In this document: in pieces, positions 1,329 to 40,899 of the stretch
Numbering within the stretch: position 1 is the stretch's first letter
How the letters are laid out: each line of letters opens with the position of its first letter
Assembly: GCF_032444005.1 (NCBI RefSeq)
Contig: NC_091282.1
Location: 273,420,001 to 273,484,000, forward strand
Length of the DNA stretch: 64,000 nucleotides
Source: Ranitomeya imitator
Taxonomy: Eukaryota
Reading direction: 5' to 3'
Translations under genes and position numbers: made by a program
The notes under the pieces: generated by a model
What the model saw: the letters and a program-made list of their open reading frames with translations, nothing else
The model's database searches: none
What the model was told of the DNA's origin: nothing

Positions 1329-1330
1329 TA

Positions 1331-10929: not shown

Positions 10930-13920
10930 AGCACATTTATTACTTCTACTCCCCTCCCTTCTTTCCTTTCATATCCCAGCCCCTAAATCCCCATTAACCC
11001 CTATTGTCTCACTCTGTCTATCTACTCTATCTATCTTCATATTTACACAAGTACCCTCCCTCCCTCCTTCAGATTCTAGTTTAAAAGTTCCTCCAGCCTT
11101 GTGACCATTGTTTCCCCAGCACAGCTGCACCCTCCCCATTGAGGTGCAGCCCATCCCTATCATAGAACCTGTAGCCAACACAGAAGGCAGCCCAGTTCTC
11201 CAAGAACTCAAACCCTCCCTTCCCGCACCAATTTCTAAACCACTTATTTATTTCCCTAAGCTCCCACTTTGTTTCTAGTGATGCTCATGGCACTGGCAGT
11301 AGTTCTGAAAACATCACCTTGGAGGTCCTGGCCTTCAGGTTCTCTCCTAGTTCACTGTAATCATTCTTAAGGATCTTCCACATCTCTCTAACTTTGTCAT
11401 TGGTACTGATGTGTACCATGACCTCTGGGTTTACCCCAGCCCCTCCCAGCGATCTGTTTATCCCTATTCGATCTGCAATATGCCGAACCCAAGCACCCAA
11501 CAGACAACACACTGTTCGGCATTCATGGTCTCGATGGCAAATGACCCTATCTGTCTACCTAAGAGTCCCCTATCACCAACATCTGTCTGACCTTTGCTGC
11601 ACTACTATTTCCCTCCTTCCTACAGCAGTCATTTTCCTGGTTGTTATAAGTAACTGTCATGCTGCTGCAGTGCAGTATAACGCAACCTCCACCAGAGGGA
11701 GCTTGAGAGGCAAGTGAGACTGTGTACACAGAGAAGCACCACAAAGCAGCAGCACAGGCGCCACCAAGTGACGAGAGAGTGGTCAGACAAGTTGAGTCAA
11801 AATACAATCAGAGGCAGAAGTACCAAAAGGGATAGGCAGTAAACGTGGTCAGGAACAAGCCAGGAGGTTCAGCAGTGGTCAGAAGCGGATAAGACAAAGT
11901 CAGAAGGCAGAAGCGAGTCCGAATACGAGCCAAGTCAGGAACCAGAGACAGAGGGAGTCAACAGACACAGAGCAAGTCATGGATCACAGCAGGATAAATC
12001 AAGAGCTACCAGAGTCAGGTTCACATTCCGAAGGCAGAGCTATAGGTAACATTGCCAGCAGAATACATGGGAGCCAGATACCAAACCTGAACCCAGAATG
12101 AGGCAGAGAAAAGTTAACCCTTGACCTGATCCACCCAGAAAAAGGACAGTCAGGATTAAACCCTGGAATGGATCATGACAATACCCTCCTCTCAAGGAGG
12201 GGCCACCAGACCCCAGGTTTCCTAGGATAACGTGCGTGAAATGCTCAGATCAATCGATCAGCATGGACAGATCACGCCGGCACCCAAGATCGATCCTCAG
12301 GACTGTAACCCCTCCAATAGACCAAATACTGAAGTGAACTACGGACCATGTGGGAATCCACAATCCATTTCCACTTCATACTTGGTCTGACCATCGACAG
12401 AGACAGGAGGTGGAGGAGATGGAGGCCCAGCAGAGGATGGTGCAAATGACTTAAGAAGGGACTTATGGAACACATTGGGGATCCGAAGCGACGAGGAAGC
12501 CATAAGCGAAAGGCAACTGGATTGACCACCTCAATGATCTCGTAAGGACCAATAAACCTGGGACCTAGCTTAGCAGAAGAAACCTTAAGATGAATGTTCC
12601 TAGTAGACAACCACACTTTATCTCCTTCCAGGAATATAGGTCCTACAGTATGTCACTTATCCGCAAAAAGTTTATGTTTTCCCTGAGCCTCCCCAGTGTT
12701 CTTCTGGACCTCCCTCCACACCTCCCCAAATTGTTGCATTGTCGTATCAGCCTCTGGACATCCTGAATCCAGCCTAGAAAATTTGTCAAAATGGGGGTGA
12801 AAACCATAGTTACAGAAGAATGGAGATGTGCCAGTGGACTGGTTAATCTGATTGTTAAATGCAAACTCAGCCACGGGCAATGAAGAACACCAATCATCCT
12901 GCTGAGACATAGCAAGACACCTCAAAATCTGTTCAAGTGATTGATTGGTCCTCTCCGTCTGACCGTTGGTCTCAGGATGGTAAGCAGAGGAGAAGGTCAG
13001 CTATAATGTCATGCTGCTGCTGTGCAGTATAATGCAACCTCCACCAAAGGAAGCTTCAGAGGGAAGTGAGATTGCGTACACAGAGAAGCACCACAGAGCA
13101 GCAGCACAGGCACCACCAAGTGGAGAGAAAGTGGTCAGACAAGCCAAGTCAAAATACAATCAGAGGCAGAAGTACCAAAAGGGATAAGCAGTAAACATGG
13201 TCATGGAACAAACCAGGAGATTCAGCAGCGGTCAGAAGCGGATAAGACAAAGTCAGAAGGAAGAAGCAAGTCCAAAAACGAGCCAAGTCAGGAACCAGAG
13301 AATCAAACAGACAAACAGGGAAATGCTGGGAAAAGGGCAGACAGAGGGAGTCAACAGACATGAGGCAAGTCAGGGATCACAGCAGGACAAATCAAGAGCT
13401 ACCAGAGTCAGGTTCACTCGCCGAAGGCAGGCCTATAGCTGACACCGCCAGCAGGATGCATGGGAGCTAAATAGCAAACCTGACCCAGAATGAGGCAGAG
13501 CAAAGTTAACCCTTGACCTGATCCACCCAGAAAAAGGCAGACAGGATTAAACCCTGGAATGGATCATGACAGCAACATTCTGTAGTGCTGTAGTGATCCT
13601 AGTCCTGGGCCTGCATTCCTAATATCAGCCAAACAGGCTGACACTGTTCCCCCTACCCCTTCTTAATGTCATCCACCTACCTACTTCTGGGTCCTGATCT
13701 TCCCCTCATCCACCCTCATCCATATCACTGGCCCCATCCAGGGCAAGCTCAGCGTGCTCTAAACTCCTCTCCAGATTTGCAATGCTCCTGAGTGGTGCAA
13801 GCTGCATATTTAGATCCATTGCCTGGGCTTCCAAACATGTAACTCAGACATTTTTATCCTCAAATGGCATGCATACCTCTCACAAGTTGCACATCTAGTA
13901 GCATTGCCCATGGAGCACAT
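10930..13920 (-). mobile_element. Degenerate CR1 LINE ORF1 region (zinc-knuckle/coiled-coil plus SGNH esterase), interrupted by Gypsy element D
   Basis: Minus-strand frames give LVIGDS and VMVHISTNDKVR...LKARTSKVMFSELLPVP (esterase-like), and a CATCERYA...LEAQAMDL-like N-terminal segment right of element D. Confidence 0.7.
11655..13571 (-). mobile_element. Internally deleted Ty3/Gypsy element D: LTRs 11655-12180 and 13007-13571, with an integrase/chromodomain remnant between them
   Basis: Two TGTCATG...CATGACA direct repeats; interior encodes [20 protein letters not shown] and [17 protein letters not shown] fragments; flanks GTAAC/GCAAC. Confidence 0.9.
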
Positions 13921-14039
13921 AGTAAAAGGGAATAAACACTGCAGATAAAAGCAGAAAAACAATGGAAAGCCAGTAAGAAAAACACCAAACTATGCTCTTT
14001 TGTTAAACTATGATATTGTGTTTAACTATGCACTATCTG

Positions 14040-14990
14040 CAGCCCCTGCTCCACTCAGCAGCAATCACTTGGTCACTGGAACTTGTAGTTCTCTAACCAG
14101 CAATGGCATGTAGATTTCTGGATGTGTGACAAGTGGAGGAGTCCTGGGTGTGAGAAAATTGTTGAAAGAGCAGGAAAGAAGGTTGGGATCAGAGAGTTGG
14201 AGAGGGGAGTTAGTAAAATCATACCAGCCGGGGGAAGATCAGGCCCAGAATTTTCCCATCTTCATGTGTAAGAGAGTTAGTAATCTTTGAAAAGCAGAAG
14301 GATGAAGTTAAATAAGATGAGTGGCAGATGTGGAGAGCGAATCATCAATGGGGATGTTAAGGTAAGCCATGAAGAAAGTGGGGATGTCACAACATAGAAA
14401 ATGTGGAAGCCAGGAAGTAAAGTAAAGCAGGACCTGGTTGGATTTGCCTGGAGGGTGATACACCACTGCCACTCACAGGGAGAAGGGTTTGAAGAATCTG
14501 ATCATGTGGACTTCAAAGGAGGGAAGCATAAGTGAAGGTACTGGGGAGACAACTTTTAAAGCACATTGTGATTACAGGAGCAGAATAACACCTCCACCTT
14601 TTCGGCTCTCAGGTCTGAGATTATGTGAAAATTGTAGTCTACAATACAAGAGAACAGCAGTAGCGGTGGTGGTGTCTGACTGCTGGATCCAGATTTCAGT
14701 GACAGACGGAAGGTTACAGGAAATAGAAAGGAAGAAGTTGTGAATGTAGGGGAGTTTGCTGCATGCTGACTGTGAGTTACAGAGAGCACAATTAAATGAC
14801 ACAGTTGAAGGTGAGCACTGAGTGCTGATGAGATGTTAATACTAGTGGAAAGAGGCCCAAGATTAGGTGAGGTGTCGCCAGGAGCTAGGAGACAAAAGAG
14901 AGAGTGTGCAGAATGTGTAAAAGGGCGGCAGATATGCAAGAAAGTAGCAGCTAGATATTGATGAAACAAAGAGATAGGGAAAAAAATAAT
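14040..14990 (-). mobile_element. Degenerate L2-clade LINE ORF2 fragment (apurinic endonuclease region)
   Basis: Frame 14572-14802 gives NCALCNSQS..KLPYIHNFFLS..VTEIWIQQ..RKGGGVILLL, typical of a LINE endonuclease N-terminus. Confidence 0.7.
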
Positions 14991-16510
14991 GTAGTGCAAC
15001 TGAACAAAAAGTCTCCTGTCCTCTCAAACTGCCATGTTTAACTGCATGCATTTGAAAAAATATTGCACTTAGAAAGATATTGTACAAGTGCCCCCCAGCA
15101 CAAGTGCTATCTCTAAGTCAGATATGAATAGATAGGAAGTATCTTCTTATCTTCTAGGATCTAGCACCAATTTAACTTGTTAAATAATTAAGAAGTTAAC
15201 AAGAGATGAGAGCACCTATTATTATTCAAGATAAACACGAAAGTTGGACAGAACAGACCATAAAACATCAAGTTATGGATAAATCTTTGAACATTTATAG
15301 ACACATGGAGAATTAGAATTGGACTGCATGACTGATTTGGGTTAGCAAAAACACACCCAAATGTGGTTATTTTTTGAGGTGTTCCAAAATAGTACAGGTA
15401 GGGGTAGGGCTTAACTCCTTAGTGACAGAGCCAATTTTGTCAATTATGACCATTGTCACTTTATGAGGTTATAGCTCTGGAATGCTTCAATAGTGAAGAT
15501 GATGTGATGTAAAGCTGTGAGAAATAACAGGATTGAGAGATTTGCATTTCTTTCTTTTAGTTATTACAGAACAGGATTAATGTCAGTTATACTTTATGTG
15601 TGCAATAGTTACAACTAGGTGGAACATGAAAGAAACCATTCAGCATTTAGATAAACCGTCTATGTTCCCTTTTAAAGGCAGTATGAACGTAGCATCTATG
15701 CTGCTGCACTTCTGCAGATGTCTCTCTGCAGCTGGAGAACTGTTCAGCCAGCGCAGGATTCAGGAATTTCCGCACTGCTCTCCTGTTGGCACTTATTAAA
15801 CATGCACGAGAACGATTATTCTTTGTGCTAATTTTAACCTTTGTAGCACCAGCATTTTTATAGTCCAGAACAGCGCAGAGTAACAGCACATGTTGTTTTT
15901 TTTATTCTTCTTAGAACATTCTTAAAGAGAACCTGTCACTTTTCTTTGAGCCTCTAAACCCCCTCTATCTGGTCCTGTATTAGATTATTTCCACCCTTAA
16001 TTTACCATATTTTCTGGACAGTTAATGCTTAATTCACACAGAAGTTGCTGTCTTACACTTCGGTGAATCATACTGTTTCGTAAAGATTATGGGCCCAATT
16101 AATCAAGACCATTGATGGTCATGCCGGTGTTTATGAGGGGGTGGTGGAGTTATAGGCGCATCTTAAAAGTGACTAGAGTAAAATTTGTAGTGTAAGGTAC
16201 ATCACAATCGTTCATGAACTAGACGAAACGCTCTCTCCCGCCCTAGTTCCACCGATTGTGGCAGACCTGGCCAAAACTGGCTTGAAAGTGCCAAAAGTAG
16301 CAACATTTTTGCAGAACTTCGTACTGTGCAAACATGTAGCAACTTTTCAAAGCATTTTACCTCAGATTTCACTTTGATAAATCGAGCCTATTAGTGAAAT
16401 ACAGAGTGGTTTTTGGAGAAGACCTGTCATTTGCACAGGAGCAAAATAAAAACAATGTAAAATTCAGGAAAATAATGGATTTTACACCAGGTAAAAAAAT
16501 CTGGCAAGTG

Positions 16511-22809: not shown

Positions 22810-25800
22810 GTAAGTATAGTAGTGTTGTATCTTTAGCATTGTAGGCACGTTACTATGATTATTCCATCATTCTCTGTATTTCTTTTCCTTTTGTTGAACA
22901 CTCAATTATGGCTCAAGTTCGTCAAAGTTTCTACATCAATGTTCTAGCGTAAAACACTCTGAAAAATTGCTAAACTTTTGTGCAAAATGAAATTGCGTAA
23001 ACAGTTTGTGACTTTTGCCCAGCGCTGAGCAAGTGTGTGGATCTGTTTAAACGCCAGGGTTGTGCTGGGCATGGCTATGCCTACTTGTCAAAATCTTCAA
23101 AAGTGGTGGCTTTTCATATGTTAGGAGATTTCTGGTGAGGAGCATGAAGGCACCTGCCACTCAGAAGATGTGCCAAATTAATTAAGTGATTGAATTCCCT
23201 ACATACCCCTCATTAAGACTGACATATGAGACGCCAGGGAATCTGTCAGCAGGTTTTTGTTATATAATCTCAGGACACCATGAGGTAGGTTAAAACACAT
23301 AATTCAGTGATGTGTCACTTATTAGGCTGTGTTTACTTGCAATGAAGGTTTTATCACTGGGACATTATCACTGCCAGGTTTGTTGTACAGTACGACTCCG
23401 CCCCCTCATGTGATAAACAGCTCATTGTCTATAGCTATGTACATACAGAGCCTGGTTGGGGCGGGATTAGCGTTCTCTGCTCTGCTTCATGCTAAATCTA
23501 AAGCCTCTGATTGTGCCACAACTCTTGCCCCCAGTAAACTAAGTGATACATTGTGTCAGAACTTCCGAACCCCAAGAGTACCCCGTGACAGTACCCTTCC
23601 TCTTACTCCCCCCTTTTCTAAGACCAGACAGAAACCTGGATAAAATCTGAGGAGCTTGTATGCTATCACGGGGCTCCCAAGACCTCTCCTCGGGACAAAA
23701 ACCCTTCCAATCAACCAAAAAGAGAGTTTTACCTCTCAACTTTTTCATGGCAAGAATGTCTTTAACCTCAAAAACATCTGGATCAGAGACAGGTAAAGGA
23801 GTTTGAGCAGGAGAAACAAGGAACTGATTGAAGACAACTGGTTTCAAAAGAGAAACATGAAAAGAATTAGGTATGCGAAGAGAAGCAGGCAATTTCAGCT
23901 TGTAGGAAACATCATTGATACGAGACACAACCTCGAAAGGGCCAATGTACCATGGACCCAATTTATATGAGGGAATCTTAAGACGAATAAACCTGGAGGA
24001 CAACCACACTTTATCGCCTGACCGATATACAGGAGAATCCAGACGTCGTTTATTGGCATGTCTGTTAATCCTGGCCTGAGCCTGTTCCAGGGCGATTTTG
24101 GTCTCCTGCCAGACCCTGGAGAAATCCTCAGACAGAAGATCAGCCGCTGGCACACCCGAGACAGGGAGTACCGGCAGAGGGATACCAGGATGTTGCCCAT
24201 AGGCGGTGAAGAATGGAGACTTGGAAGAAGACTCATTGATGTGGTTATTGTAAGCGAAATCAGCCCACGGAAGCAAATCAGACCAGTTATCTTGATGAGC
24301 GTTGGAAAAATGATGAAGGTAAGTCATCAGTATTTGGTTTATGCACTCTGCTTGTCCGTTGGTCTGAGGATGATAAGCTGTAGAAAAATCCAGGGTAACA
24401 TTCATTAATTTACATAGAGCCCGCCAGAAACGAGAAGTGAACTGAACTCCTCTATCAGAAACTATGTGCAACGGAAAGCCATGAATCGGGAAGACATGAG
24501 AAATGAAGATTCTGACCAATTCAGGAGCGGAAGGCAATCCAGGCAAAGGGATGAAGTGAGCCATCTTTCAGAATCGATCCACAACAACAAAAATGACTGT
24601 ATGACCAGAGGACTGATGCAGATCAGTAATAAAGTCAATATGTTGCCACGGGACTGAAGGAACTGGAAGAGGATGTAGGAGACCGGAGGGCAGATGTCTG
24701 GGAACCTTGTTCCTAGCACAAGACGGACACGAAGCGACAAAACCCCGAACATCCGAAAGAAGGGATGGCCACCAATAATGATGCAAAATGAGAGAGCGTT
24801 TTCTTGTACCCGACATGGCCTGCCAGTCTTGAGGCATGGCCCCAACGTAGGACTCGAGACCTCTTGTTCACCCAGACAAGGGTTTTACCTGGTGGTAAGG
24901 AAGACAAGCTGACCGGAGCCACAAGAATAATTTTGCTGGGGTCCACGATGTGTGCTGGTTCCTCTACAACATCAGATGCAAGAAATTACCTGGCCAAAGC
25001 TTCAGCTTTAAAGTTCTTGTCGCCAGGACGGAAATGTAGTTCGAAGTCAAAACGGGCAAAGAATAACGACCATCTGGCTTGTCGGGGATTCAGTCTTTGC
25101 GCAGAGCGGATATATTCAAGGTTCTTGTGGTCTGTAAAGATCTTGAAAGGGTGAACAGCTCCCTCTAAGAGATAACGCCATTCCTCCAGCCCAAATTTTA
25201 TGGCCAATAGTTCCTTGTCACCAGTGGCGTAGTTCCTCTCCGAGGCGGAGAAGATTTTGGGAAAGAAACTACAAGTAGCCAATCGTCCGGAAGAAAATCT
25301 CTGGGAGAGTACTGCACCAGCTCCAATGGCAGAAGCGTCTACCTCAAGAATAAAGGGTTTGTTGATCTCAGGCCGACGGATTACAGGAGCCGAGGCAAAT
25401 GCATGTTTCAGAGACCGAAAAGCATCTTCAGCTTCAGAAGACCAGATGTGGGGATTGGACCCCTTGCGAGTCAAAGCAGAAATTGAGGCGACCAGAGTGG
25501 AGAAATGTGGAATAAACTGCCGGTAGTAATTGACGAACCCAAGAAAACGTTGAATTGCTTTCACTCCCTGAGGGCGTGGCCAGTTAAGCACAGCAGACAC
25601 TTTCCTCCGGGTCCATTTGCAAGCCAGAGTCAGAAATGATATAGCCAAGAACGGTAGCAAAGACTGCTCAAAAACACATTTCTCAAGTTGGGTGTAGAGA
25701 CGATTCTCTCTAAGACGGGAGAGCACTTGACGGACATCTCTTCTGTGAGAAGCCACACCACCACCACACAGGAGTAGAGTAGATCTCGGAAAACATCATT

Positions 25801-28800
25801 CACAAACTCCTGGAACACTGCTGGAGCATTACATAAGCTGAAAGGCATGACTAAATACTCATAGTGACCCTCCCGGGTGTTAAAAGCAGTTTTCCATTCG
25901 TCTCCTGAACGAATCGAACATCCAATTTCGTGAAAATTCGGGCTCCTCCCAGGCGATCAAATAACTCAGGTATGAGTGGTAGCGGGTACTTGTTCTTCAT
26001 TGTGAGATTGTTGAGGCCACGGTAGTCTATACACGGACGAAATGTCCCATCCATCTTCTTAACGAAGAAAAAACCCGCACCTGCAGGGGAGGAGGATTTG
26101 CGAATAAAACCTTTGGTTAAATTCTCCCGGACGTATTCAGTCATGGCTTGAGTCTCGGCAGGAGACAACAAGTAGATTCGACCTGGGGGAGGAGTAGAGC
26201 CCGGAACTAGATCAATTGGGCAGTCATAGGGTCGATGCGGAGGTAAGGTGTCAGCCTCTTTCTTATCGAAGACATCCAGAAAAGACAAATACGCGGTAGG
26301 TAAATTGGAGGACCCCAAGATAGGACAAGAAGATTCTCTTGGTAACACAGGAAGCAAACATTTATTCTGGCAGGAGTCCCCAACGCAGGATTTCGCCAGA
26401 CCGCCAGTCAATACAAGGCTCATGAGTTCTTAACCAAGGAAGTCCAAGAAGAAACGTGTGGGACAAAGATCGCAGCACATAGAAGACTATCTTCTCACGA
26501 TGCAGTATTCCAATTTGGAGTTCCAATTCTTCAGTAACCAATGTAATGGACTCCCGCAGAGGTTGGCTATCGACTGACGGAATCTGTCGAGGAGTCTCCA
26601 GGGATCTGACCGGAATCCGCAATCTCCTAACTGCCTCGAGTTGGATAAAGTTCCCGGCTGCCCCGGAATCTTTATAAGCAGAGTCAGAGAAACGTTTATT
26701 ACCCAGATGTAAAAGAACAGAAAGAGTGAGGGGTTGAGAGGGTTCTGGGATATCTAGGGAGACCTCTCTTACCTGTCCTAGGCGGAGGCGTTTCCCGGCC
26801 TCAAAGGACAGGAACGCAAGAGATGAGACGCACTGCCACAATAGAAACACAGAGACCTTGAGCAAGCCTCTCTTTCCAATGCTGATCCACAGGTTTAAGA
26901 CAGTCCACCTGCATGGGTACCGGGGCAGAGGTCGACTCAGACCGAGAACAGGAAGAATTAGGAGTAACTGGAGGGAGTCGAGGAAATCTCGTCTCTCTAG
27001 CGGATTCTCAAGAACCTTCCTGGAAATGTAAATCAATGCGTGTTGCCAAAGCGATAGGATCCTCCAAGGATGATGGAGTATCTTGACCCACCAACTCATC
27101 CTTGATTCGAGGAGAAAGCCCACGCCAGAAGGCTCCCACTAAAGCCTCATTATTACATCCTAATTCGGATGAAAGGGTGTGAAAGCAGATGGCGTATTGA
27201 CCCAGCGAAAGTGTACCTTGATGAAGGTTAAACAGAGACTCGGTGGTAGAGGCCAAACGACCCAGTTCATCAAATACTTTATGAAAAGTATCAACAAAGG
27301 AGGAGAGTTGGGAAACAAGGGGATCACCCCGCTCCCAAAAGGATTAACCCACGCCAAAGCCTCGCCCTGAAGGTGAGAGATTACAAAAGCCACTTTAGAA
27401 CGGTCAGTGGGATACTGCATGGGAAGTCACTCAAAATGAAGCTGGCATTGGTTTAAAAATCCTCTGCACAATTTAGGATCCCCACTATAGCGAGGAGGTT
27501 TAGCCAAACGGGGACGTGGATGAGGAGCCAAAGCCTGAAAGGGAATGGGAGCGGAAGACTGGAGGGCACGAAGGCCATAAAATTAAGAATATGAGCTTGA
27601 GTGTTACGCTGTTGGGCCAGCTCTTGTTGGAGACTTGCTAACTGAGAGGCGCTCCCAGGGTCGGAGGCCTGCATGGACCTCAAAAAGGACATAATCCTTG
27701 ACTGATTCTCCCGGAGGAATAATAATTCCTTCTGGCTAGGAGTAGGGGCACCAGCACGGTCCATGGCCTGTTTGTACTGTCAGAACTTCCGAACCCCAAG
27801 AGTGAACCCACAGTACCGTGACAACGAACCTCCCAAGGGTGAGCTTACCAGATGGACCACCCCCTATACAGGGAGCATTAGGGGCAGGCCTGTTATGATG
27901 CGGTGGTCTAGGAGCAACATGGAACGAGCTCTGAAGGAAGTGGTAACTGTACTGACCGCAGTCCCTAAGCTCAACACAACACTAGAAGCAGCTGTGGAAT
28001 GCTCCTAACTCTCCCTATGCATCTCGTCACAGCCTAAGAGCTAACTACCCCTAAAGACAGAAGCAGGAAAACTATCTTGCCTCAGAGAAAATCCCCAAAG
28101 GATAGATTAGCCCCCCACAAATAATGACTGTGAGTGGAGAGAGAAAAGACATACACAGAATGAAACCAGGATGAGCACAGGAGGCCAGTCTAGCTTGATA
28201 GATAGGACAGGATGGAATACTGTGCGGTCAGTATAAAACACTACAAAAATCGACGCAGAGTTTACTAAAAATCTCCACACCTGACTAAAGGTGTGGAGGG
28301 TAAATCTGCTTCCCAGAGCTTCCAGCAAGACAGAATTAATTCATACTGATAATGCTGGATAAACATAGAAAACACAGAACGGATAAGTCCACAATCTGTG
28401 AACAGAAAAAGAGCAAGCAAAAACTTAGCTTAGCTGAACTGGTCAGGATAACAGGGAAATCCAAAGAGATGTGAATCCAACCAGGAACCATTTACAAGTG
28501 GCACCAGCTGAAGGACAGAGCAGACACAAATAGCAGAGCAGAGACGATCGGTGGAAGCAGCTGAAGACAGCTAACTCCAAGGAGCAGCCACACCACTAGA
28601 AACCACAAGAGGGAGCCCAAGAGCAGAACTCACAAAAGTGCCACTTACAACCACCGGAGGGAGCCCAAGAGCGGAATTCACAACAGTACCCCCCCCCTTG
28701 AGGAGGGGTCACCGAACCCTCACCAGAGCCCCCAGGCCGATCAGGACGAGCCAAGTGAAAAGCACGAACCAAATCGGTGGCATGGACATCGGAGGCAACA

Positions 28801-31800: not shown

Positions 31801-32707
31801 GGAAAAACCACAGCGCCTGGCGAATTCTAAGTCCATTAAGTTCGAGGCAGCGCCTGAATCCACAAATGCCATGACAGAAAAGGACGACAATTGTTGTGAA
31901 TTCTGTGGCAGAGCTCCCTCCTGTGGTCACAAGTGGTACTTCGGCTGATTCTCTCTATGAGCTTCCGTTGGTGGAGGAAAGTGGTACTGCGGCTTCTGAG
32001 TTTCCTTCCTCAGGTGATGTGGTGAAATCGTTAGGTGCTGCTCTATTTAACTCCACCTAATGCTTTGATCCTGGCCTCCAGTCAATGTTCTAGTATTGGA
32101 CTTGCTTCCTCCTGGATCTTTCCTATGGCCTGCTGCTCTGCATAGCTAAGTTGCTCTTGTGTTATTTTTGTTTGCTGTTTTTTCTGTCCAGCTTGTTTAT
32201 TTGTTTTTCTTGCTCGCTGGAAGCTCTGGGACGCAGAGGGTGTACCTCCGTGCCGTTAGTCGGTACGGAGGGTCTTTTTGCCCCCTTTGCGTGATTGTTT
32301 GTAGGGTTTTGTGTTGACCGCAAAGTTACCTTTCCTATCCTCGCTCTGTTCAGAATGTCGGGCCTCACTTTTCTAAATCTATTTCATCTCTACATTTGTC
32401 TTTTCATCTTAACTCACAGTCATTATATGTGGGGGGCTGCCTTTTCCTTTGGGGTATTTCTCTGAGGCAAGGTAGGCTTATTTTCTATCTTCAGGCTAGC
32501 TAGTTTCTCAGGCTGTGCCGAGTTGCATAGGGAGCATTAGGCGCAATCCACGGCTGCCTCTAGTGTGGTTGGAGAGGATTAGGGATTGCGGTCAGCAGAG
32601 TTCCCACGTCTCAGAGCTCGTTCTATGTTTTTGGGTTATTGTCAGGTCACTGTATGTGCTCTGACTTCTATGTCCATTGTGGTACTGAATTACCTAATCA
32701 TAACAGT

Positions 32708-32718
32708 ACTGGAGGCCA
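32708..32718 (+). promoter_or_regulatory. Self-priming primer-binding site of element A
   Basis: ACTGGAGGCCA, 2 nt after the 5' LTR, is the exact reverse complement of LTR positions 32072-32082 (TGGCCTCCAGT), which start 28 nt after TATTTAA at 32044. Confidence 0.8.
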
Positions 32719-32727
32719 AAAGTACTA

Positions 32728-34719
32728 ATGATTCTCAATAGAGTGAAAAAAGAAGTTCTGAGACCATTTTTTTTTCTCTGCACTGTGTTTTGCCTTTTTT
32801 TTCCCCTAGACATTTGGGTGGTTCAGGACACAGGTGTAGCGATGGACATTAAAGGTCTGTCTTCATGTGTGGATCAGCTCACGGCAAGAGTACAAAATAT
32901 TCAAGACTTTGTGGTTCATAATTCTATGTTAGAACCAAGAATTCCTATTCCTGATTTGTTTTTTGGAGATAGAACTAAATTTCTGAGTTTCAAAAATAAT
33001 TGTAAACTATTTCTGGCTTTGAAACCTCGCTCCTCTGGTGACCCAGTTCAACAAGTCAGGATCATTATTTCTTTTTTACGTGGCGACCCTCAGGACTGGG
33101 CATTTTCTCTTGCGCCAGGAGATCCTGCATTATGTAATATTGATGCGTTTTTCCTGGTGCTCGGATTGCTGTACGATGAACCTAATTCAGTGGATCAGGC
33201 AGAGAAAAATTTACTGACTCTGTGTCAGGGTCAGGATGAGATAGAGGTATATTGTCAGAAATTTAGAAAGTGGTCCGTGCTCACTCAATGGAATGAAGGT
33301 GCGCTCGCAGCTATTTTCAGAAAGGGTCTCTCTGAAGCCCTTAAGGATGTCATGGTGGGATTTCCTATGCCTGCTGGTCTGAATGAGTCTATGTCTTTGG
33401 CCATTAAGATCGGTCGACGCTTGCGTGAGCGTAAATCTGTGCACCATTTGGCGGTATTATCTGAGCATAAACCTGAGCCTATGCAGTGTGATAGGACTTT
33501 GACCAGAGTTGAACGGAAAGAACACAGACGTCAGAATGGGCTGTGTTTCTACTGTGGTGATTCCACTCATGCTATCTCTGATTGTCCTAAGCGCACTAAG
33601 CGGTTCGCTAGGTCTGCCACCATTGGTACGGTACAGTCAAAATTTCTTTTGTCCGTTACCTTGATCTGTTCTTTGTCATCTTATTCTGTCATGGCATTTG
33701 TGGATTCAGGCGCTGCCCTGAATTTGATGGACTTGGAGTATGCTAGGCGTTGTGGGTTTTTCTTGGAGCCCTTGCAGTGTCCTATTCCATTGAGAGGAAT
33801 TGATGCTACACCTTTGGCCAAGAATAAGCCTCAGTATTGGACCCAGCTCACCATGTGCATGGCTCCTGCACATCAGGAGGTTATTCGCTTTCTGGTGTTG
33901 CATAATCTGCATGATGTGGTCGTGTTGGGGTTGCCATGGCTACAAGTCCATAATCCAGTATTAGATTGGAAATCCATGTCTGTGTCCAGCTGGGGTTGTC
34001 AGGGGGTACATGATGATGTCCCATTTCTGTCTATTTCGTCATCCACCCCTTCTGAGGTCCCAGAATTCTTGTCTGATTACCGGGATGTATTTGATGAGCA
34101 CAAGTCCGATACCCTACCTCCGCATAGGGATTGTGATTGTGCTATCGATTTGATTCCTGGTAGTAAATTCCCAAAAGGTCGACTGTTTAATTTATCTGTG
34201 CCTGAGCACGCCGCTATGCGGAGTTACGTGAAGGAGTCCTTGGAGAAGGGGCATATTCGCCCGTCTTCGTCGCCATTAGGAGCAGGGTTCTTTTTTGTAG
34301 CCAAGAAGGATGGTTCACTGAGACCTTGTATAGATTACCGCCTTCTAAATAAGATCACGGTTAAATTTCAGTACCCCTTGCCACTGTTATCTGATTTGTT
34401 TGCTCGGATTAAGGGGGCTAGTTGGTTCACCAAGATAGTTCTTCGTGGTGCATATAATCTTGTGCGTATTAAGCAAGGCGATGAATGGAAAACTGCATTT
34501 AATACACCCGAGGGCCATTTTGAGTACCTAGTAATGCCATTCGGACTTGCCAATGCTCCATCAGTGTTTCAGTCCTTTATGCATGACATCTTCCGAGAGT
34601 ACCTGGATAAATTCCTGATTGTATACTTGGATGATATTTTGGTCTTCTCGGATGATTGGGAGTCTCATGTGAAGCAGGTCAGAACGGTGTTTCAGGTCCT
34701 GCGTGCCAATTCTTTGTGA
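32728..34719 (+). pseudogene. Element A gag-protease-RT N-terminal part (likely start MDIKG near 32842); frame broken at about 34716
   Basis: CCHC knuckle CFYCGDSTHAISDC, protease [17 protein letters not shown] and YLDD; compared with element B (ALFVK) the frame is lost by an apparent 4-nt deletion. Confidence 0.9.
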
Positions 34720-34925
34720 AGGGATCAAAGTGTCTCTTTGGTGTTCAGAAGGTTTCATTTTTGGGGTTCATTTTTTCCCCTTCTACTATCGAGATGGACC
34801 CTGTTAAGGTCCAGGCCATCCATGATTAGACTGAGCCGACATCTCTGAAAAGTCTGCAAAAGTTCCTGGGCTTTGCTAATTTTTATCGTCGCTTCATCTG
34901 CAATTTTTCTAGTATTGCTAAACCA

Positions 34926-36905
34926 TTGACCGATTTGACCAAGAAGGGTGCTGATGTGGTCAATTGGTCTTCTGCTGCTGTGGAAGCTTTTCAAGAGTTG
35001 AAGCGTCGTTTTTCTTCTGCCCCTGTGTTGTGTCAGCCAGATGTTTCGCTTCCGTTCCAGGTCGAGGTTGATGCTTCTGAGATTGGAGCGGGGGCTGTTT
35101 TGTCGCAGAGAAGTTCTGATCGCTCGGTGATGAAACCATGCGCCTTCTTTTCCAGGAAGTTTTCGCCTGCTGAGCGAAATTATAATGTTGGTAATCGAGA
35201 GTTGCTGGCCATGAAGTGGGCATTCGAGGAGTGGCGTCATTGGCTTGAGGGAGCTAAGCATCGCGTGGTGGTCTTGACTGATCATAAGAACTTGACTTAT
35301 CTCGAGTCTGCCAAGCGGTTGAATCCTAGACAGGCTCGTTGGTCGCTGTTTTTCGCCCGTTTTGACTTTCTGATTTCGTATCTTCCGGGCTCTAAAAATG
35401 TGAAGGCGGATGCCCTGTCTAGGAGTTTTGTGCCCGACTCTCCGGGTTTGTCTGAGCCAGCGAGTATTCTCAAAGAGGGAGTAATTGTGTCTGCCATCTC
35501 CCCTGATTTGCGGCGGGTGCTGCAAAAATTTCAGGCTAATAAACCTGATCGTTGCCCAGCGGAGAAACTGTTTGTCCCTGATAGGTGGACGAATAAAGTT
35601 ATCTCTGAGGTTCATTGTTCGATGTTGGCTGGTCATCCTGGAATCTTTGGTACCAGAGAGTTAGTGGCTAGATCCTTTTGGTGGCCATCTCTGTCGCGGG
35701 ATGTGCGTTCTTTTGTGCAGTCCTGTGGGATTTGTGCTCGGGCTAAGCCCTGCTGTTCTCGTGCCAGTGGGTTGCTTTTGCCCTTGCCGGTCCCGAAGAG
35801 GCCTTGGACACATATCTCTATGGATTTTATTTCAGATCTTCCTGTCTCTCAAAAAATGTCGGTCATTTGGGTAGTTTGTGATCGCTTCTCTAAGATGGTC
35901 CATTTGGTACCCTTGTCTAAATTACCTTCCTCCTCTGATTTGGTGCCATTGTTCTTCCAGCATGTGGTTCGTTTACATGGCATTCCAGAGAATATCGTTT
36001 CTGACAGAGGTTCCCAGTTTGTTTCGAGGTTTTGGCGAGCCTTTTGTGCAAGGATGGGCATTGACTTGTCTTTTTCCTCGGCTTTCCATCCTCAGACTAA
36101 TGGCCAGACCGAACGAACCAATCAGACCTTGGAAACATATCTGAGATGCTTTGTTTCTGCTGATCAGGATGACTGGGTGTCCTTTTTGCCTTTGGCTGAG
36201 TTCGCCCTTAATAATCGGGCCAGCTCGGCTACCTTGGTTTCGCCGTTTTTCTGCAACTCTGGGTTCCATCCTCGTTTCTCTTCAGGGCAGGTTGAGTCTT
36301 CGGACTGTCCTAGTGTGGATACTGTGGTGGACAGGTTGAAGCAGATTTGGACTCATGTAGTGGACAATTTGACCTTGTCCCAGGAGAAGGCTCAACGTTT
36401 TGCTAATCGCAGACGCTGTGTGGGTCCCCGACTTCGTGTTGGGGATTTGGTTTGGTTGTCTTCTCGTCATATTCCTATGAAGGTTTCCTCTCCTAAATTT
36501 AAACCTCGTTTCATTGGTCCGTATAGGATTTCTGAGGTTCTTAATCCTGTGTCTTTTCGTTTGACCCTTCCAGATTCTTTTTCCATCCATAACGTATTCC
36601 ATAGGTCATTGTTGCGGAGATACGTGGCACCTATGGTTCCATCTGTTGATCCTCCTGCCCCGGTTTTGGTGGAGGGGGAGTTGGAGTATAGTGTGGAGAA
36701 GATTTTGGATTCTCGTGTTTCAAGACGGAAACTCCAGTATCTGGTTAAGTGGAAGGGTTATGCTCAGGAAGATAATTCCTGGGTCTTTGCCTCTGATGTC
36801 CATGCTCCCGATCTTGTTCGTGCCTTTCATGTGGCTCATCCTGGTCGTCCTGGGGACTCTGGTGAGGGTTCGATGACCCCTCCTCAAGGGGGGGTACTGT
36901 TGTGA
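34926..36905 (+). pseudogene. Element A RNase H-integrase-chromodomain part of pol
   Basis: VEVDASEIG, RQARWSLFF, HHCC zinc finger, FHPQTNGQTER, GPY motif, chromodomain [19 protein letters not shown]; stop codon lies inside the 3' LTR. Confidence 0.92.
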
Positions 36906-39579
36906 ATTCTGTGGCAGAGCTCCCTCCTGTGGTCACAAGTGGTACTTCGGCTGATTCTCTCTATGAGCTTCCGTTGGTGGAGGAAAGTGGTACTGCGGCT
37001 TCTGAGTTTCCTTCCTCAGGTGATGTGGTGAAGTCGTTAGGTGCTGCTCTATTTAACTCCACCTAGTGCTTTGATCCTGGCCTCCAGTCAATGTTCTAGT
37101 ATTGGACTTGCTTCCTCCTGGATCTTTCCTGTGGCCTGCTGCTCTGCATAGCTAAGTTGCTCTTGTGTTATTTTTGTTTGCTGTTTTTTCTGTCCAGCTT
37201 GTTTATTTGTTTTTCTTGCTCGCTGGAAGCTCTGGGACGCAGAGGGTGTACCTCCGTGCCGTTAGTCGGTACGGAGGGTCTTTTTGCCCCCTTTGCGTGG
37301 TTGTTTGTAGGGTTTTGTGTTGACCGCAAAGTTACCTTTCCTATCCTCGCTCTGTTCAGATAGTCGGGCCTCACTTTTCTAAATCTATTTCATCTCTACA
37401 TTTGTCTTTTCATCTTAACTCACAGTCATTATATGTGGGGGGCTGCCTTTTCCTTTGGGGTATTTCTCTGAGGCAAGGTAGGCTTATTTTCTATCTTCAG
37501 GCTAGCTAGTTTCTCAGGCTGTGCTGAGTTGCATAGGGAGTGTTAGGCGCAATTCACGGCTGCCTCTAGTGTGGTTGGAGAGGATTAGGGATTGCGGTCA
37601 GCAGAGTTCCCACGTCTCAGAGCTCGTTCTATGTTTTTGGGTTATTGTCAGGTCACTGTATGTGCTCTGACTTCTATGTCCATTGTGGTACTGAATTACC
37701 TAATCATAACAGACAATGAGCAAATCAGGGTCACAGATAAGAGAAATTTAGGCTGTATAGTACTAATGGTAACAGACCTAGCGACTCTCTTAGTACGCTT
37801 AGGGCAATCAGAGATAACATGAGCAGAATCACCACAGTAAAAACACAGCCTATTCTGATATCTGAATTCCTGCCGTTCTATTCTAGTCAAAATCCTATCA
37901 CATTGCATAGGTTCAGGACTATGCTCAGAGGATACTGCCATATGGTGCACAGCTTTGCGCTCGCGCAGACGCCGATCAATCTGAATGGCTAGAGACATAG
38001 ATTCGCTCAAACCGGCAGGCGTAAGAAAGCCCACCATAACATCTTTAAGGGTTTTAGAAAGACCTTTTCTGAAAATAGCAGCCAGAGCCTCTTCATTCCA
38101 TTTAGTGAGCACAGACCATTTTCTAAATTTCTGGCAGTATAACTCTGCCGCTTCCTGACCTTGACACAAGGCCAACAGGGTTTTTTCTGCATGATCCACA
38201 GAATAAGGTTCGTCATACAATAATCCGAGCACTTGAAAAAATGCATCTACATTCAATAATGCCGGATCCCCTGTTTCAAGAGAAAAAGCCCAGTCTTGAG
38301 GATCACCACGCAGCAAGGATATGATGATTTTCACCTGCTGAATGGGATCACCAGAAGAACGGGGTTTCAAAGCAAAAAACAATTTGCAGTTATTTTTAAA
38401 GTTCAAAAACTTGGATCTGTCCCCAAAAAACAAATCAGGAGTAGGAATTCTGGGCTCTAAAGCCGGAGTCTGGACAACATAGTCCTGGATATTCTGTACT
38501 CTTGCAGCAAGTTGATCCACACGAGAAAACAAACCCTGAACATCCATGCCAAAACATATATCCTGAACCACCCAGATATCAAGAGGAAAAAAAAGACAAA
38601 CCAAAGCACAGAATAAAAAATGGTTCAGAACTTTCTTTTCCTTCTTTTGAGCTGCATTTAATTCATTTTTGACCACTTGTACTGTTATGATGCGGTGGTC
38701 TAGGAGCAACATGGAACGAGCTCTGAAGGAAGTGATAACTGTACTGACCGCAGTCCCTAAGCTCAACACAACAGTAGAAGCAGCCGTGGAATGCTCCTAA
38801 CTCTCCCTATGCATCTCGTCACAGCCTAAGAGCTAACTACCCCTAAAGACAGAAGCAGGAAAACTATCTTGCCTCAGAGAAAATCCCCAAAGGATAGATT
38901 AGCCCCCCACAAATAATGACTGTGAGTGAAGAGGGAAAAGACATACGCAGAATGAAACCAGGATGAGCACAGGAGGCCAGTCTAGCTTGATAGATAGGAC
39001 AGGATGGAATACTGTACGGTCAGTATAAAACACTACAAAAATCCACGCAGAATTTACTAAAAATCTCCACACCTGACTAAAGGTGTGGAGGGTAAATCTG
39101 CTTCCCAGAGCTTCCAGCAAGACAGAATTAATTCATACTGATAATGCTGGATAAACATAGAAAACACAGAACGGATAAGTCCACAATCTGTGAACAGAAA
39201 AGAGCAAGCAAAAACTTAGCTTAGCTGAACTGGTCAGGATAACAGGGAAATCCAAAGAGATGTGAATCCAACCAGGAACCATTTACAAGTGGCACCAGCA
39301 GACATAAATAGCAGAGCAGAGACGATCAGTGGAAGCAGCTGAAGACAGCTAACTCCAAGGAGCAGCCACACCACTAGAAACCACAAGAGGGAGTCCAAGA
39401 GCAGAACTCACAAAAGTGCCACTTACAACCACCGGAGGGAGCCCAAGAGCGGAATTCACAACACAGGCCCGAGGGAAACTATTGCCGTGGAAGCTGATAC
39501 CGGGGAACAGGAAGCAGGAGAGGAAGGAAGCGGAAGTGGCTAAGGCGGAGACACAGGACTGAGTGACAGTAACTGAAAC

Positions 39580-39870
39580 ACAGAGTGGACTGGATATGGT
39601 AGACAACCAGGACAGACAGGGAATTGCGGAGACACAGGATGGACTGGATAGACACAGGCTGGACTGGATATAGCGGACGACCAGGACAGGCAGGGAATGG
39701 CGGAGACACAGGACGGACTGGACATGGTGGACGACCAGGACAGGCAGGGAATGGCAGAGACACAGGACAAACTGGATATGGCAGATGCCCAGGACAGGCA
39801 GGGAATGGCGGAGACAGGACGGACTGGATATGGCGGATGCCCAGGACTGGCAGGTTATGGCAGAGACACA
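39580..39870. repeat. About 54-bp tandem repeat inside the 5' LTR of element C
   Basis: Repeated CAGGACAGGCAGGGAATGGCGGAGACACAGGACGGACTGGA...; produces an 18-aa periodicity in the spurious ORFs over it. Confidence 0.85.
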
Positions 39871-40899
39871 GGACGGAGCAAGGAATAGAGAACCTGGGTT
39901 AAATGAGGACAATTGACAAACAGGCAAAGAGCAGAGGAAGGAATTACCTTATATACAAGACGTGCTGAAGGACTTCCGGGTCAGAGTCCTCCCAGGATCA
40001 TAGAGAAAAGGTATCGGGCGCCTGTAGTTCAGGAAAGTGAGGTGTACATGCGCAGAGAGGTGCTGGAGCGAGGAGTGCGCATGCGCACCCGCTGAGAACC
40101 AGGAAGAGGACGTGTGCCTGCAGGAGGAGCGCGCCGCCGTGGGTGAGAAGAAGCGGAGAAGACGGCGGCGGACCCGGCAGCTGGAGGAACAGGAGGAGCG
40201 TGCCGGAGCAGGTAAGTATGAGCTGAAGCGGGAAGACGAGTCCCATAATAGCTACCCTTACACTATGTCCATGGCATGGAGTAGACCCATTAAGAAAGAC
40301 TTTACAAACCAAGGCATATATAAATGACTCAGGGGCCTAGTAAGTGGCTTTCTGGTTTACAAGCAGAACCTAAACTGTATAACAAACATTTGGCCAACAG
40401 CTATTACTCCTACATCTTCTTACAAATCCATGCCCAGCTTTACCAAGAGTGCATGTATTTCAATTATTACCAAGGTGTAAACCACTGCCAGGCTCCACTA
40501 ACAATGGCTTATCCCAGGTGAGAACAAAAAGATCTGGCTTGAAATCTAAAAGGACTGACCCTTAAGCTTTTTATCCACATAAAATAGGTGGCATCTATAG
40601 GACTATCTTTCCTGACTATTTCTCACACATGAACTTTCAGCTAGGATGTTTCCAAAAGGGACAGTGGAAAAACCAGACACTGCTAGTAAGGGGGCTCATC
40701 ACCGAGGAGAACAAAAGGGTTGCTCCTTAAAATTCAAATGGGGGAAATTCAATAGGTTCTAGATTGTCGGACGATCCTAACAATATTGGTTCAGATGGCT
40801 AATGTCTAATGTGTATGGGGATCTTTAGATAGTTGTCAGGAATCCCAAATATTATATGGTTGATATGTTCTACAAAAGTTGGTTGGTTCTGCATCAGTT

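What the first reader, a model, noticed from the sequence alone, without database searches (positions are those of the whole stretch)
11655..40250. Four Gypsy families each carry their own tRNA-independent self-primer/PBS pair (covariation)
Seen: the sequence just after each 5' LTR differs between families: A ACTGGAGGCCA, B TACAAGTGGT, C ACAAACAGGC, D TATAGCTGAC. In each family the reverse complement lies inside the same LTR, starting 28-30 nt after the first T of a TATA-like box, where a Pol II start is expected. None has the TGG start of a tRNA-CCA primer site. Established: fission-yeast Tf1 primes reverse transcription by folding the first 11 nt of its RNA onto its PBS, and this has been proposed for vertebrate Tf1/sushi-group elements. 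Inference: four unrelated sequence pairs with the same geometry are a natural covariation proof that these amphibian elements self-prime, and that primer and PBS co-evolve as a family-specific lock and key.
Basis: partly seen in the sequence, partly recalled or inferred. Interest (0 to 1): 0.88.

Follow-up and report, generated by a model that had tools for sequence, protein, structure and literature searches.

The report
Self-priming frog Gypsy retrotransposons, known type
Four decayed, partly nested jumping genes in a poison-frog genome each carry a short stretch right after their first repeat that pairs with the predicted start of their own RNA, the known signature of Tf1/sushi-type "self-priming", so this is a clean but ordinary example of an already described mechanism.

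Summary
The window is from Ranitomeya imitator. It holds four chromodomain Ty3/Gypsy elements: A is inside B, B is inside the LTR of C, and D lies apart.

- **Pairing.** The 9-11 nt that follow the 5' LTR (after CA plus 1-2 nt) are complementary to a site inside the LTR. A pairs over 11 nt, C and D over 10 nt. B pairs over 9 nt plus one G·U, not the exact 10-mer claimed.
- **TATA spacing.** The LTR site lies 28-30 nt after the only TATA-like box in A, C and D. In B the spacing is 30 nt in the 3' LTR and 17 nt in the 5' LTR, which has a 13-nt deletion.
- **Chance.** Shuffling gives p of about 6e-4 to 1.4e-2 per element, before the TATA spacing is counted.
- **Covariation.** Sister families A and B differ by three compensatory double changes in the duplex.
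- **Outside relatives.** At least eight relatives in public contigs show the same geometry with different sequences.
- **RNA start.** The duplex begins at a pyrimidine|purine step in 13 of 15 elements, as expected if it begins at the RNA 5' end.

Self-priming is the best reading. It is already described as a common feature of the Tf1/sushi group, vertebrates included (Butler 2001, cited in PMC10085805 and PMC6317226). No start site was mapped.

The scan's first readers flagged the same signature on many other pieces of this genome. Verdict: new members of a known kind, low to moderate interest.

The parts
31892..32705 (+). Element A 5' LTR (TG..CA)
   Evidence: 98.8% identical to 36898-37711; ends read
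32044..32050 (+). A: the only TATA-like box in the LTR (TATTTAA)
   Evidence: a single match, 28 nt before the primer
32072..32082 (+). A: self-primer TGGCCTCCAGT (predicted RNA 5' end)
   Evidence: exact reverse complement of the PBS; paired to the PBS in the MFE fold with probability 0.95
32708..32718 (+). A: PBS ACTGGAGGCCA, 2 nt (GT) after the LTR's CA; gag ATG at 32728
32728..36905 (+). A: gag-PR-RT / RH-IN-SH3-chromodomain, broken into two frames (32728-34719 and 34926-36905)
36898..37711 (+). A 3' LTR (primer copy at 37078-37088), preceded by the polypurine tract AAGGGGGGG + TAC
38683..39463 (-). Element B 5' LTR; TATTTAT at 39310..39304; primer GCCACTTGTA at 39293..39284
38672..38681 (-). 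B: PBS TACAAGTGGT, 1 nt (G) after CA; 9 Watson-Crick pairs + 1 G·U with the primer
27891..28685 (-). B 3' LTR (primer copy at 28502..28493, 30 nt after TATTTGT)
39464..40250 (-). Element C 5' LTR, upstream part (U3, TATATAA at 39955..39949, primer, R-U5 with 54-nt tandem repeats); upstream edge unverified
39916..39925 (-). C: self-primer GCCTGTTTGT
27778..27889 (-). C 5' LTR, last 112 nt (separated from the rest by the B insertion), ends ..TCTGACA
   Evidence: the 26-nt end matches the 3' remnant
27766..27775 (-). C: PBS ACAAACAGGC, 2 nt (GT) after CA, followed at once by the gag ATG
23554..23590 (-). C: 37-nt remnant of the 3' LTR (TGTCACGG..TCTGACA) after the polypurine tract
13007..13571 (-). 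Element D 5' LTR; TATTTAG at 13473..13467; primer GTCAGCTATA at 13443..13434
12996..13005 (-). D: PBS TATAGCTGAC, 1 nt (T) after CA; its 3' half overlaps the start of integrase homology
11655..12180 (-). D 3' LTR (primer copy decayed to GTTACCTATA at 12050..12041)
8517..9321 (+). Solo LTR of an A-like subfamily (90% identical); primer site reads TGGCTTCCTGT, TATA box mutated

Best explanation
**What they are.** These are four dead copies of chromodomain-bearing Ty3/Gypsy retrotransposons (chromoviruses of the Tf1/sushi kind) in the genome of the frog Ranitomeya imitator. When active, they most likely started reverse transcription by self-priming.

**Inferred steps.**
1. Pol II starts about 30 nt behind the LTR's TATA box.
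2. The first 10-11 nt of the RNA fold back, or pair within the RNA dimer, onto the complementary PBS. The PBS sits 1-2 nt after the 5' LTR.
3. The element's RNase H cuts the RNA after the duplex.
4. The freed 3' end primes minus-strand DNA through U5-R.

**Shown here.** The complementarity, its position, the TATA spacing, the covariation, and the same geometry in relatives.

**Taken from Tf1 work or inferred.** The start site, the RNase H cut and the priming itself.

**Why primer and PBS co-vary (my inference).** In Tf1 the primer stays attached to the minus strand. I know this only from the title of Atwood-Moore et al. in the reference list shown. If so, plus-strand strong-stop DNA would copy the primer and re-template the PBS in every cycle. 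By ordinary reverse-transcription logic, primer and PBS would then co-vary almost automatically.
For: **Family.** Pfam finds gag, protease, RT, RNase H, integrase (H2C2, rve, SH3_Tf2-1) and a chromodomain in A and, over several ORF pieces, in C. B shows all of these except a scored chromodomain. D keeps only the integrase C-terminus and chromodomain. The nearest solved structures are Ty3 Gag-Pol and Ty3 RT.

**Pairing.** Post-LTR 9-11-mers are complementary to one LTR site. Shuffle p-values are about 1.6e-3, 1.4e-2, 1e-2 and 6e-4.

**TATA spacing.** The site lies 28-30 nt behind the sole TATA-like box, and only 1.0-1.6% of LTR positions qualify.

**Covariation.** A versus B shows three compensatory double substitutions plus one change from G-C to G·U.

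**Specificity.** Cognate duplexes score -12.7 to -21.2 kcal/mol. Non-cognate pairs are no better than -6.2.

**Outside relatives.**
- L001 shows the same signature.
- In the metagenome loci, strict criteria give 11 of 27 hits, against 1, 2 and 4 in three control searches.
- The duplexes are sharply limited to 10-11 bp. In six of the convincing loci (and in A) the PBS follows ACAGT; L001 and L003 have ATAGT.

**RNA start.** The duplex's 5' edge is a pyrimidine|purine step in 13 of 15 elements, p about 9e-7.

**Literature.** Self-priming is stated to be a common feature of Tf1/sushi elements from fungi to vertebrates.
Against: - **No RNA data.** The public runs gave only short contigs of a very high-copy family and no start sites.
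- **Folding.** The unconstrained fold pairs primer with PBS only in A. The pairing probability is 0.0-0.28 in B, C, D and L001 (B was folded one base out of register).
- **Pretzel arms.** The two flanking duplexes of Tf1's three-duplex "pretzel" were not detectable above shuffles.
- **Distance.** Primer and PBS are 437-636 nt apart, against 137-261 nt in most metagenome relatives.
- **Poly(A) signal.** No AATAAA or ATTAAA lies in any R-U5, so R is undefined.
- **Weak spots by element.** B has only 9 Watson-Crick pairs, and its 5' LTR spacing is 17 nt. C's LTR is unpaired. D's PBS overlaps a deletion junction.
- **tRNAs.** The host tRNA set could not be screened. A contains TGG two nt into its PBS.
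- **Decay.** All four copies are defective.
Confidence: 0.85

Rival explanations
1. The long-range complementarity is real and selected, but it serves another purpose: circularising the 5' leader for packaging, dimerisation or control of gag translation (the gag ATG follows the PBS within 4-20 nt). The true primer would be something else.
For: The gag ATG lies immediately after the PBS in A, B, C and L001. Priming itself was not observed. The pretzel arms were not found.
Against: The duplex always begins 1-2 nt after the LTR's terminal CA. That is the one place from which minus-strand synthesis yields correct LTR ends. Its length is fixed at 10-11 bp, like the Tf1 primer. No alternative PBS with a TGG start is present in B, C or D. 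The same architecture is experimentally tied to priming in Tf1.
Confidence: 0.08
2. The elements are primed by a host tRNA, a tRNA half or a tRNA fragment, and the matches to the LTR are incidental.
For: The host tRNA set could not be screened: the window has no tRNA gene and the genome's DNA could not be fetched. A's PBS contains TGGAGGCC two nt in. Half-tRNA priming exists in other LTR elements.
Against: Four of four matches to the element's own LTR have joint odds of about 1e-10 by chance. They sit at the TATA-defined start, co-vary between A and B and recur with other sequences in relatives. B, C and D have no TGG at the start. The PBSs differ between sister families, which a shared host tRNA would not allow.
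Confidence: 0.03
3. Some of the four cases are artefacts of decay or mis-set boundaries. C's TATA/primer region may not belong to C's LTR, and D's "PBS" may be integrase sequence brought next to the LTR by the deletion. Fewer than four families would then support the claim.
For: C has no full 3' LTR, its 5' LTR start and target-site duplication were not found, and the same 37-46-nt motif ends both copies. In D, the integrase alignment reaches into the 10-mer: LTFSSAYHP starts at CTGACC.
Against: C's match is p of about 0.01 before counting a canonical TATATAA exactly 30 nt upstream, and its upstream region looks like a U3. For D, the 10-mer's complement sits 30 nt after the only TATA-like box (p about 6e-4 times 0.016). 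That is far less likely than a deletion that ended at a CTGAC microhomology just after the PBS. A, B and the outside relatives stand regardless.
Confidence: 0.1

Closest known systems
Tf1 / Tf2 of Schizosaccharomyces pombe (self-primed reverse transcription; Levin 1995, 1996; Lin & Levin 1997, 1998)
   Same: Chromodomain Ty3/Gypsy element. The PBS lies just after the 5' LTR and is complementary to the first ~11 nt of the element's own RNA. The duplex here is 10-11 bp, no tRNA-type PBS is present, and the primer lies at the TATA-predicted start.
   Different: Primer and PBS are 437-636 nt apart here. The two flanking "pretzel" duplexes were not detected. Nothing was tested experimentally. The host is a vertebrate.
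Vertebrate Tf1/sushi-group elements (sushi-ichi and relatives; Butler et al. 2001, J Mol Evol 52:260)
   Same: Vertebrate chromoviruses for which self-priming was already proposed from primer/PBS complementarity, as cited. Gag of relatives L001 and L002 hits the RTL1-8/LDOC and PEG10 capsid families, which derive from sushi-like elements.
   Different: The paper itself is not held in the library. I could not check whether frog elements, or these families, were included. No reference sequences were available for a tree.
Tj1, Tosmo1-3 and Tcry1 of other fission yeasts, and plant Tcn1-clade chromoviruses
   Same: Further Tf1/sushi members in which different primer/PBS pairs with the same geometry were taken as evidence of self-priming. 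This is the same covariation argument as here.
   Different: Fungal or non-seed-plant hosts. Tj1 was shown to be active in a transposition assay.
Ty3 of Saccharomyces cerevisiae (tRNA-iMet primed)
   Same: Nearest relative with solved structures: Gag-Pol 7Q5B and RT 4OL8. Same pol domain order.
   Different: Ty3 uses a tRNA primer and lacks a chromodomain (my own knowledge, not tested here). The frog elements have no tRNA-type PBS start.

Membership tests
Tf1/sushi group of chromoviruses (Metaviridae) | Ty3/Gypsy pol order PR-RT-RH-IN with gag upstream | tested here: met
   Pfam hits along A, B and C. tblastn maps all four elements.
Tf1/sushi group of chromoviruses (Metaviridae) | Chromodomain at the integrase C-terminus | tested here: met
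   PF00385 in A and C. D aligns through the chromodomain. B aligns there at 57% but is degenerate.
Tf1/sushi group of chromoviruses (Metaviridae) | PBS just after the 5' LTR, complementary to the 5' end of the element's own RNA instead of a tRNA 3' end | tested here: met
   Complementarity, position and TATA spacing. That the site is the RNA 5' end is inferred from the TATA spacing and the pyrimidine|purine step, not mapped.
Tf1/sushi group of chromoviruses (Metaviridae) | Three-duplex "pretzel" RNA structure around the primer/PBS duplex | tested here: inconclusive
   Best duplexes of the PBS-flanking segments with R-U5 are not better than shuffles, apart from a low-complexity CAG run in D.
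Tf1/sushi group of chromoviruses (Metaviridae) | RNase H cut after nt ~11 that frees the primer; the primer found on minus-strand cDNA | not testable with these tools
   Needs cDNA or VLP biochemistry.
Tf1/sushi group of chromoviruses (Metaviridae) | Phylogenetic placement of RT-RH-IN with Tf1, sushi-ichi and other reference elements | not tested
   No reference sequences were obtainable. Indirect support only: the SH3_Tf2-1 domain, the RTL/PEG10-type capsid in relatives, and the statement that the Tf1/sushi group equals GyDB's "Fungi/Vertebrates cluster" of chromoviruses.
tRNA-primed LTR retrotransposons | PBS that begins with TGG within a few nt of the LTR | tested here: not met
   After CA the sequences read GTACTGG (A), GTACAAG (B), GTACAAA (C) and TTATAGC (D). 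Only A has TGG, and it lies inside the self-complementary 11-mer.
tRNA-primed LTR retrotransposons | 10-18 nt of complementarity to a host tRNA 3' end or fragment | not testable with these tools
   No tRNA gene in the window. The host assembly's DNA could not be fetched.

The most novel reading that the evidence does not exclude
Priming without a tRNA may free these chromoviruses from any host defence that targets tRNA-type primer-binding sites, such as the 3'-tRNA-fragment silencing described for mammalian ERVs (abstract of PMC7472051). The primer also re-templates the PBS each cycle, so primer/PBS pairs could drift quickly between sister lineages, as in A versus B. Together these could help explain why Gypsy elements reached about 0.4-1 Gb in dendrobatid frog genomes. 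Nothing here tests this. Whether the expanded frog Gypsy families are mostly self-primed, and whether frogs use tRNA fragments against LTR elements, is unknown.
Probability: 0.1. Interest if true: 0.6.

Novelty: new member of a known kind. Interest (0 to 1): 0.25.

Why it matters
The finding documents, with statistics and outside controls, that several deep lineages of poison-frog chromoviruses carry the Tf1/sushi self-priming signature. It adds two supporting sequence arguments:
- compensatory changes between sister families A and B;
- a pyrimidine|purine step exactly at the edge of the duplex.

This is useful for annotating the very repeat-rich dendrobatid genomes. PBS finders that rely on tRNAs will miss these elements, and the primer/PBS pair is a handy family marker.

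It does not change what is known about the mechanism.

Tried and rejected
- **RNA evidence.** The look-up of sequencing runs found only Logan contigs, with RNA status guessed. Read laying returned thousands of ~100-nt pieces of a very high-copy family. It gave no starts or ends and no contig spanning the stretch, so no start site was mapped.
- **Other copies in the host genome.** Three look-ups in assembly GCA_958301615.1 returned no DNA because the file is too large. One ENA contig failed the same way. L002 has too little upstream sequence.
- **Unconstrained folding.** The fold supports the duplex only in A. This is not informative for 10-bp AU-rich long-range pairs.
- **Pretzel arms.** The search found nothing above shuffles.
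- **Looser metagenome screen.** A plain inverted-repeat screen near gag had many false positives in AT-rich loci: 12 real hits against 4-8 in controls. I replaced it with the stricter screen. L029, L059 and L067 are not counted as support.
- **C's LTR edge.** I searched for the 5' LTR start (TGTCACGG) and a CAATG target-site duplication and found neither.
- **Papers.** Butler 2001, Lin & Levin 1997 and Lin & Levin 1998 are not held, so they are cited only through papers that cite them.
- **tRNA screen.** Not possible: no tRNA genes were available. I did not use tRNA sequences from memory.

Full report
**Where and what**

The best protein matches, at 80-97% identity, are all unnamed products of Ranitomeya imitator. 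The window is therefore from this poison frog.

Self-alignment, reading of the ends and Pfam/tblastn give this anatomy:
- **A (+ strand).** LTRs at 31892-32705 and 36898-37711, 98.8% identical. A lies inverted inside B.
- **B (- strand).** LTRs at 38683-39463 and 27891-28685, 96.7% identical. B lies inside the 5' LTR of C.
- **C (- strand).** Internal region 23591-27765.
- **D (- strand).** Spans 11655-13571, with LTRs about 90% identical. It lies apart from the nest.

A and C carry gag, protease, RT, RNase H, integrase with the SH3_Tf2-1 domain, and a chromodomain. B shows the same domains except that its chromodomain is degenerate and was not scored by Pfam. D keeps only the integrase C-terminus and chromodomain. 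All copies are defective:
- A's pol is split over two frames.
- B is interrupted by A.
- C is in many ORF pieces.
- D has lost everything between its PBS and mid-integrase.

A and B are sister families at about 87% protein identity. C, D and the outside relative L001 are each about 44-55% identical to the others. The nearest solved structures are Ty3 Gag-Pol and Ty3 RT.

**Checking the observation**

*Element A.* The 11-mer after ..ACA GT has its exact reverse complement once in each LTR. That site is 28 nt after the first T of the LTR's only TATA-like heptamer.

The LTR reads GCCACTTGTA, which gives 9 Watson-Crick pairs plus a terminal G·U. The TATA spacing is 17 nt in the 5' LTR, which has a 13-nt deletion relative to the 3' LTR. 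In the 3' LTR the spacing is 30 nt, but the box has mutated to TATTTGT.

*Element C.* C is on the minus strand.
- The 10-mer lies 2 nt after ..TCTGACA at 27778.
- Its complement lies at 39925..39916, 30 nt after a canonical TATATAA.
- After removing B, primer and PBS are 576 nt apart.
- C has no full second LTR. After the polypurine tract only a 37-nt piece is left (TGTCACGG..TCTGACA, 23590..23554). Its last 26 nt equal the end of the 5' LTR.
- I could not find the 5' LTR's start or a target-site duplication.

*Element D.*
- The 10-mer lies 1 nt after ..CATGACA. Its complement lies 30 nt after TATTTAG in the 5' LTR.
- The 3' LTR copy has two changes.
- The integrase alignment ([17 protein letters not shown]) begins inside the 10-mer, at CTGACC. 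The internal deletion therefore ended at or just after the PBS, probably at a CTGAC microhomology.
- The alternative, that the 10-mer is pure integrase sequence, needs a coincidence of about 1e-5 and is unlikely.

*Chance.* I asked how often 5000 dinucleotide shuffles of each LTR give a complement as long as the observed one, for k-mers starting 0-4 nt after the LTR. The counts were 8, 69, 48 and 3 of 5000 for A-D. Independently, only 1.0-1.6% of positions in each LTR lie 26-34 nt behind a TATA-like box. The four cases together are far beyond chance.

**Covariation**

The LTRs and leaders of A and B can be aligned. The PBSs read ACTGGAGGCCA in A and ACAAGTGGTCA in B. The primers read TGGCCTCCAGT in A and TG-CCACTTGT in B.
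- Three of the four PBS differences are matched by the complementary change about 600 nt upstream.
- The fourth turns a G-C pair into G·U.
- A 1-nt deletion in B's primer shifts the duplex by one position.

Cognate primer/PBS duplexes score -12.7 to -21.2 kcal/mol. All non-cognate combinations are no better than -6.2.

**Relatives elsewhere**

The host assembly's DNA could not be fetched.

L001, an ENA contig 43-50% identical to A in protein, has ..CTGATA GT ATAAACCAGC. Its complement lies 32 nt behind TATTTAA.

A metagenome scan with an RT-containing alignment gave 80 chromovirus loci. I screened 27 loci: 26 of these with usable upstream sequence, plus L001. The screen required all of the following:
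- a 9-mer or longer within 120 nt upstream of the gag ATG;
- the 9-mer preceded by A[CT]A plus 0-2 nt;
- its reverse complement upstream or in the 3' terminal region;
- a TATA-like box 26-36 nt before that site.

It found 11 of 27 loci, against 1, 2 and 4 when "reverse", "complement" or "direct" matches were sought instead. Leaving out three AT-rich loci, eight are convincing: L001, L003, L011, L019, L049, L057, L068 and L073. L004, L045 and L076 add 9-11-nt cases found through their LTR pairs.

All carry different sequences, apart from L049 and L057, which share one PBS (ATATTCGAACT). The duplex is sharply limited to 10-11 bp. In six of the eight the PBS follows ACAGT; L001 and L003 have ATAGT. 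L049 and L068 differ by compensatory changes.

**Is the site the RNA 5' end?**

No RNA data could settle this. The public runs are kept only as contigs. The family is so abundant and variable that only ~100-nt pieces were laid, with no starts or ends. Two sequence arguments support the start site:
- the TATA spacing of 28-35 nt;
- the base just before the duplex is a pyrimidine and the duplex's first base is a purine in 13 of 15 elements. This is the usual Pol II initiator step. The binomial p is about 9e-7 against a 25% expectation.

A is an exception by one base: C|T, then G.

**Mechanism**

The best reading is Tf1-type self-priming. The first 10-11 nt of the RNA pair with the PBS, RNase H cuts behind the duplex, and the 3' end primes minus-strand DNA. 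This is taken from the Tf1 work as summarised in PMC10085805, PMC4600332 and PMC6317226. Here it is inferred, not shown.

*My inference on covariation.* A paper title listed says the Tf1 self primer is not removed during reverse transcription. If so, plus-strand strong-stop DNA copies it, as tRNA is copied in retroviruses, and the PBS is re-templated from the primer each cycle. A change in the first 11 nt of R would then be carried into the PBS without a separate compensatory mutation. That would explain easy drift of the pair between sister lineages. No "lock-and-key" selection is then needed, and none is shown.

*Points that do not fit neatly:*
- The unconstrained fold pairs primer and PBS only in A (probability 0.95; at most 0.28 in C, D and L001; B was folded one base out of register).
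- The two extra duplexes of the Tf1 "pretzel" were not detectable.
- Primer and PBS are 437-636 nt apart, longer than in most relatives.
- No AATAAA or ATTAAA occurs in any R-U5.

**Rivals**

- *tRNA or tRNA-fragment priming.* It cannot be excluded by a direct screen, because no host tRNAs were available. It does not explain matches to the element's own LTR, their position or their covariation. Confidence about 0.03.
- *A non-priming role for the long-range pairing.* This is possible, but it does not explain why the duplex always starts 1-2 nt after the LTR's CA. Confidence about 0.08.
- *Boundary problems.* They could remove C or D as independent cases (about 0.1), without touching A, B or the outside relatives.

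**Comparison with what is known**

[quoted passage not shown] 2001 and Goodwin & Poulter 2001. PMC6317226 says self-primers were described in the group "from yeast and vertebrates". PMC4600332 says "from fungi to vertebrates".

The covariation argument itself, different pairs with the same geometry, is how those papers extended the mechanism. The frog elements meet the tested membership features: domain order, chromodomain and self-complementary PBS. The pretzel test was inconclusive, and no tree with reference elements could be built. I file them as new members of a known kind.

The scan's own notes show that first readers flagged the same signature on many other pieces of this genome. Those notes are unchecked and are not counted as evidence.

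**Verdict**

The mechanism is already known, and the interest is low to moderate.

Noticed in passing
window 23554-40250: A three-level nest. A (LTRs 98.8% identical) is inverted inside B's pol. B (96.7%) is inside the U5 part of C's 5' LTR. LTR identities fall in the order of nesting. The flanks of A and B match over 6 bp (GACAAT, GGCCTG) if the LTR ends in CA, or over 5 bp if it ends in CAG. D's flanks match over 5 bp (GTTGC/GTTAC, one mismatch).
   Followed up: partly
window 12181-13006: D is an internal-deletion derivative. LTR and PBS are joined directly to the integrase C-terminal half and chromodomain, probably at a CTGAC microhomology. LTRs, PBS and polypurine tract are kept, as in a non-autonomous element. 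Whether it forms a family is unknown.
   Followed up: partly
window 23554-23620 and 27778-27823: C's 3' LTR is reduced to 37 nt (TGTCACGGGGTAC + the last 24 nt). A similar TGTCACGGTAC motif lies 46 nt before the end of the 5' LTR, so a deletion between short direct repeats is likely. C's flanks show no matching target-site duplication.
   Followed up: partly
window 40077-40086; L001 5220-5300: C's U3 holds an exact GCGCATGCGC palindrome (NRF1-site-like) about 125 nt upstream of its TATA box. L001's U3 is rich in similar GCGCATGCG motifs. This may be a shared promoter element of these LTRs.
   Followed up: no
window 39578-39877: About 4 tandem copies of a 54-nt unit (85% matches) lie inside the R-U5 part of C's LTR.
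   Followed up: no
R-U5 of A, B, C, D and L001: No AATAAA or ATTAAA lies anywhere between the primer site and the LTR end in any element. The poly(A) signal and the R/U5 border are unknown.
   Followed up: partly
window 32719-32730, 27753-27765, 38650-38671; L001 830-844: The gag ATG follows the PBS within about 4-20 nt in A, B, C and L001, and within 6-46 nt in the metagenome relatives. The primer/PBS duplex would therefore sit right at the translation start.
   Followed up: no
window 8517-9321: A solo LTR 90% identical to A's. Its primer site differs at two positions (TGGCTTCCTGT) and its TATA box is changed (TACTTAA). Without a PBS it cannot be tested for covariation.
   Followed up: partly
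window 1-1334 and 42931-44263: A 1334-bp direct repeat, 98.9% identical, brackets the whole region, about 42.9 kb apart. A 214-bp inverted copy of its end lies at 42648-42861. Its nature was not examined; the first copy is cut by the window edge.
   Followed up: no
window 2176-3276 and 56982-61442: Two compound satellite blocks in opposite orientation: 34-nt units (ATACAGGAGGAGATGACATACAGGTATATACTAT) next to 20/41-nt units. In the second block they are arranged in a higher-order repeat of about 1434 bp (57901-61924, 95-98% identical).
   Followed up: no
window 48178-49901, 51299-52336, 63297-64000: Further tandem arrays: a 393-nt unit in 4.4 copies, a 29/58-nt unit in about 36 copies, and a 128/256-nt unit (98% matches) that runs off the window end.
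   Followed up: no
window 31892-33400 (read laying): Family A is extremely abundant in public runs of this and related organisms. Between 402 and 2056 short contig pieces were laid per run, and summed depth is several-fold higher over the LTR than over gag, which suggests many solo LTRs. No variant is listed inside the primer or PBS, but 78 variants were not shown.
   Followed up: partly
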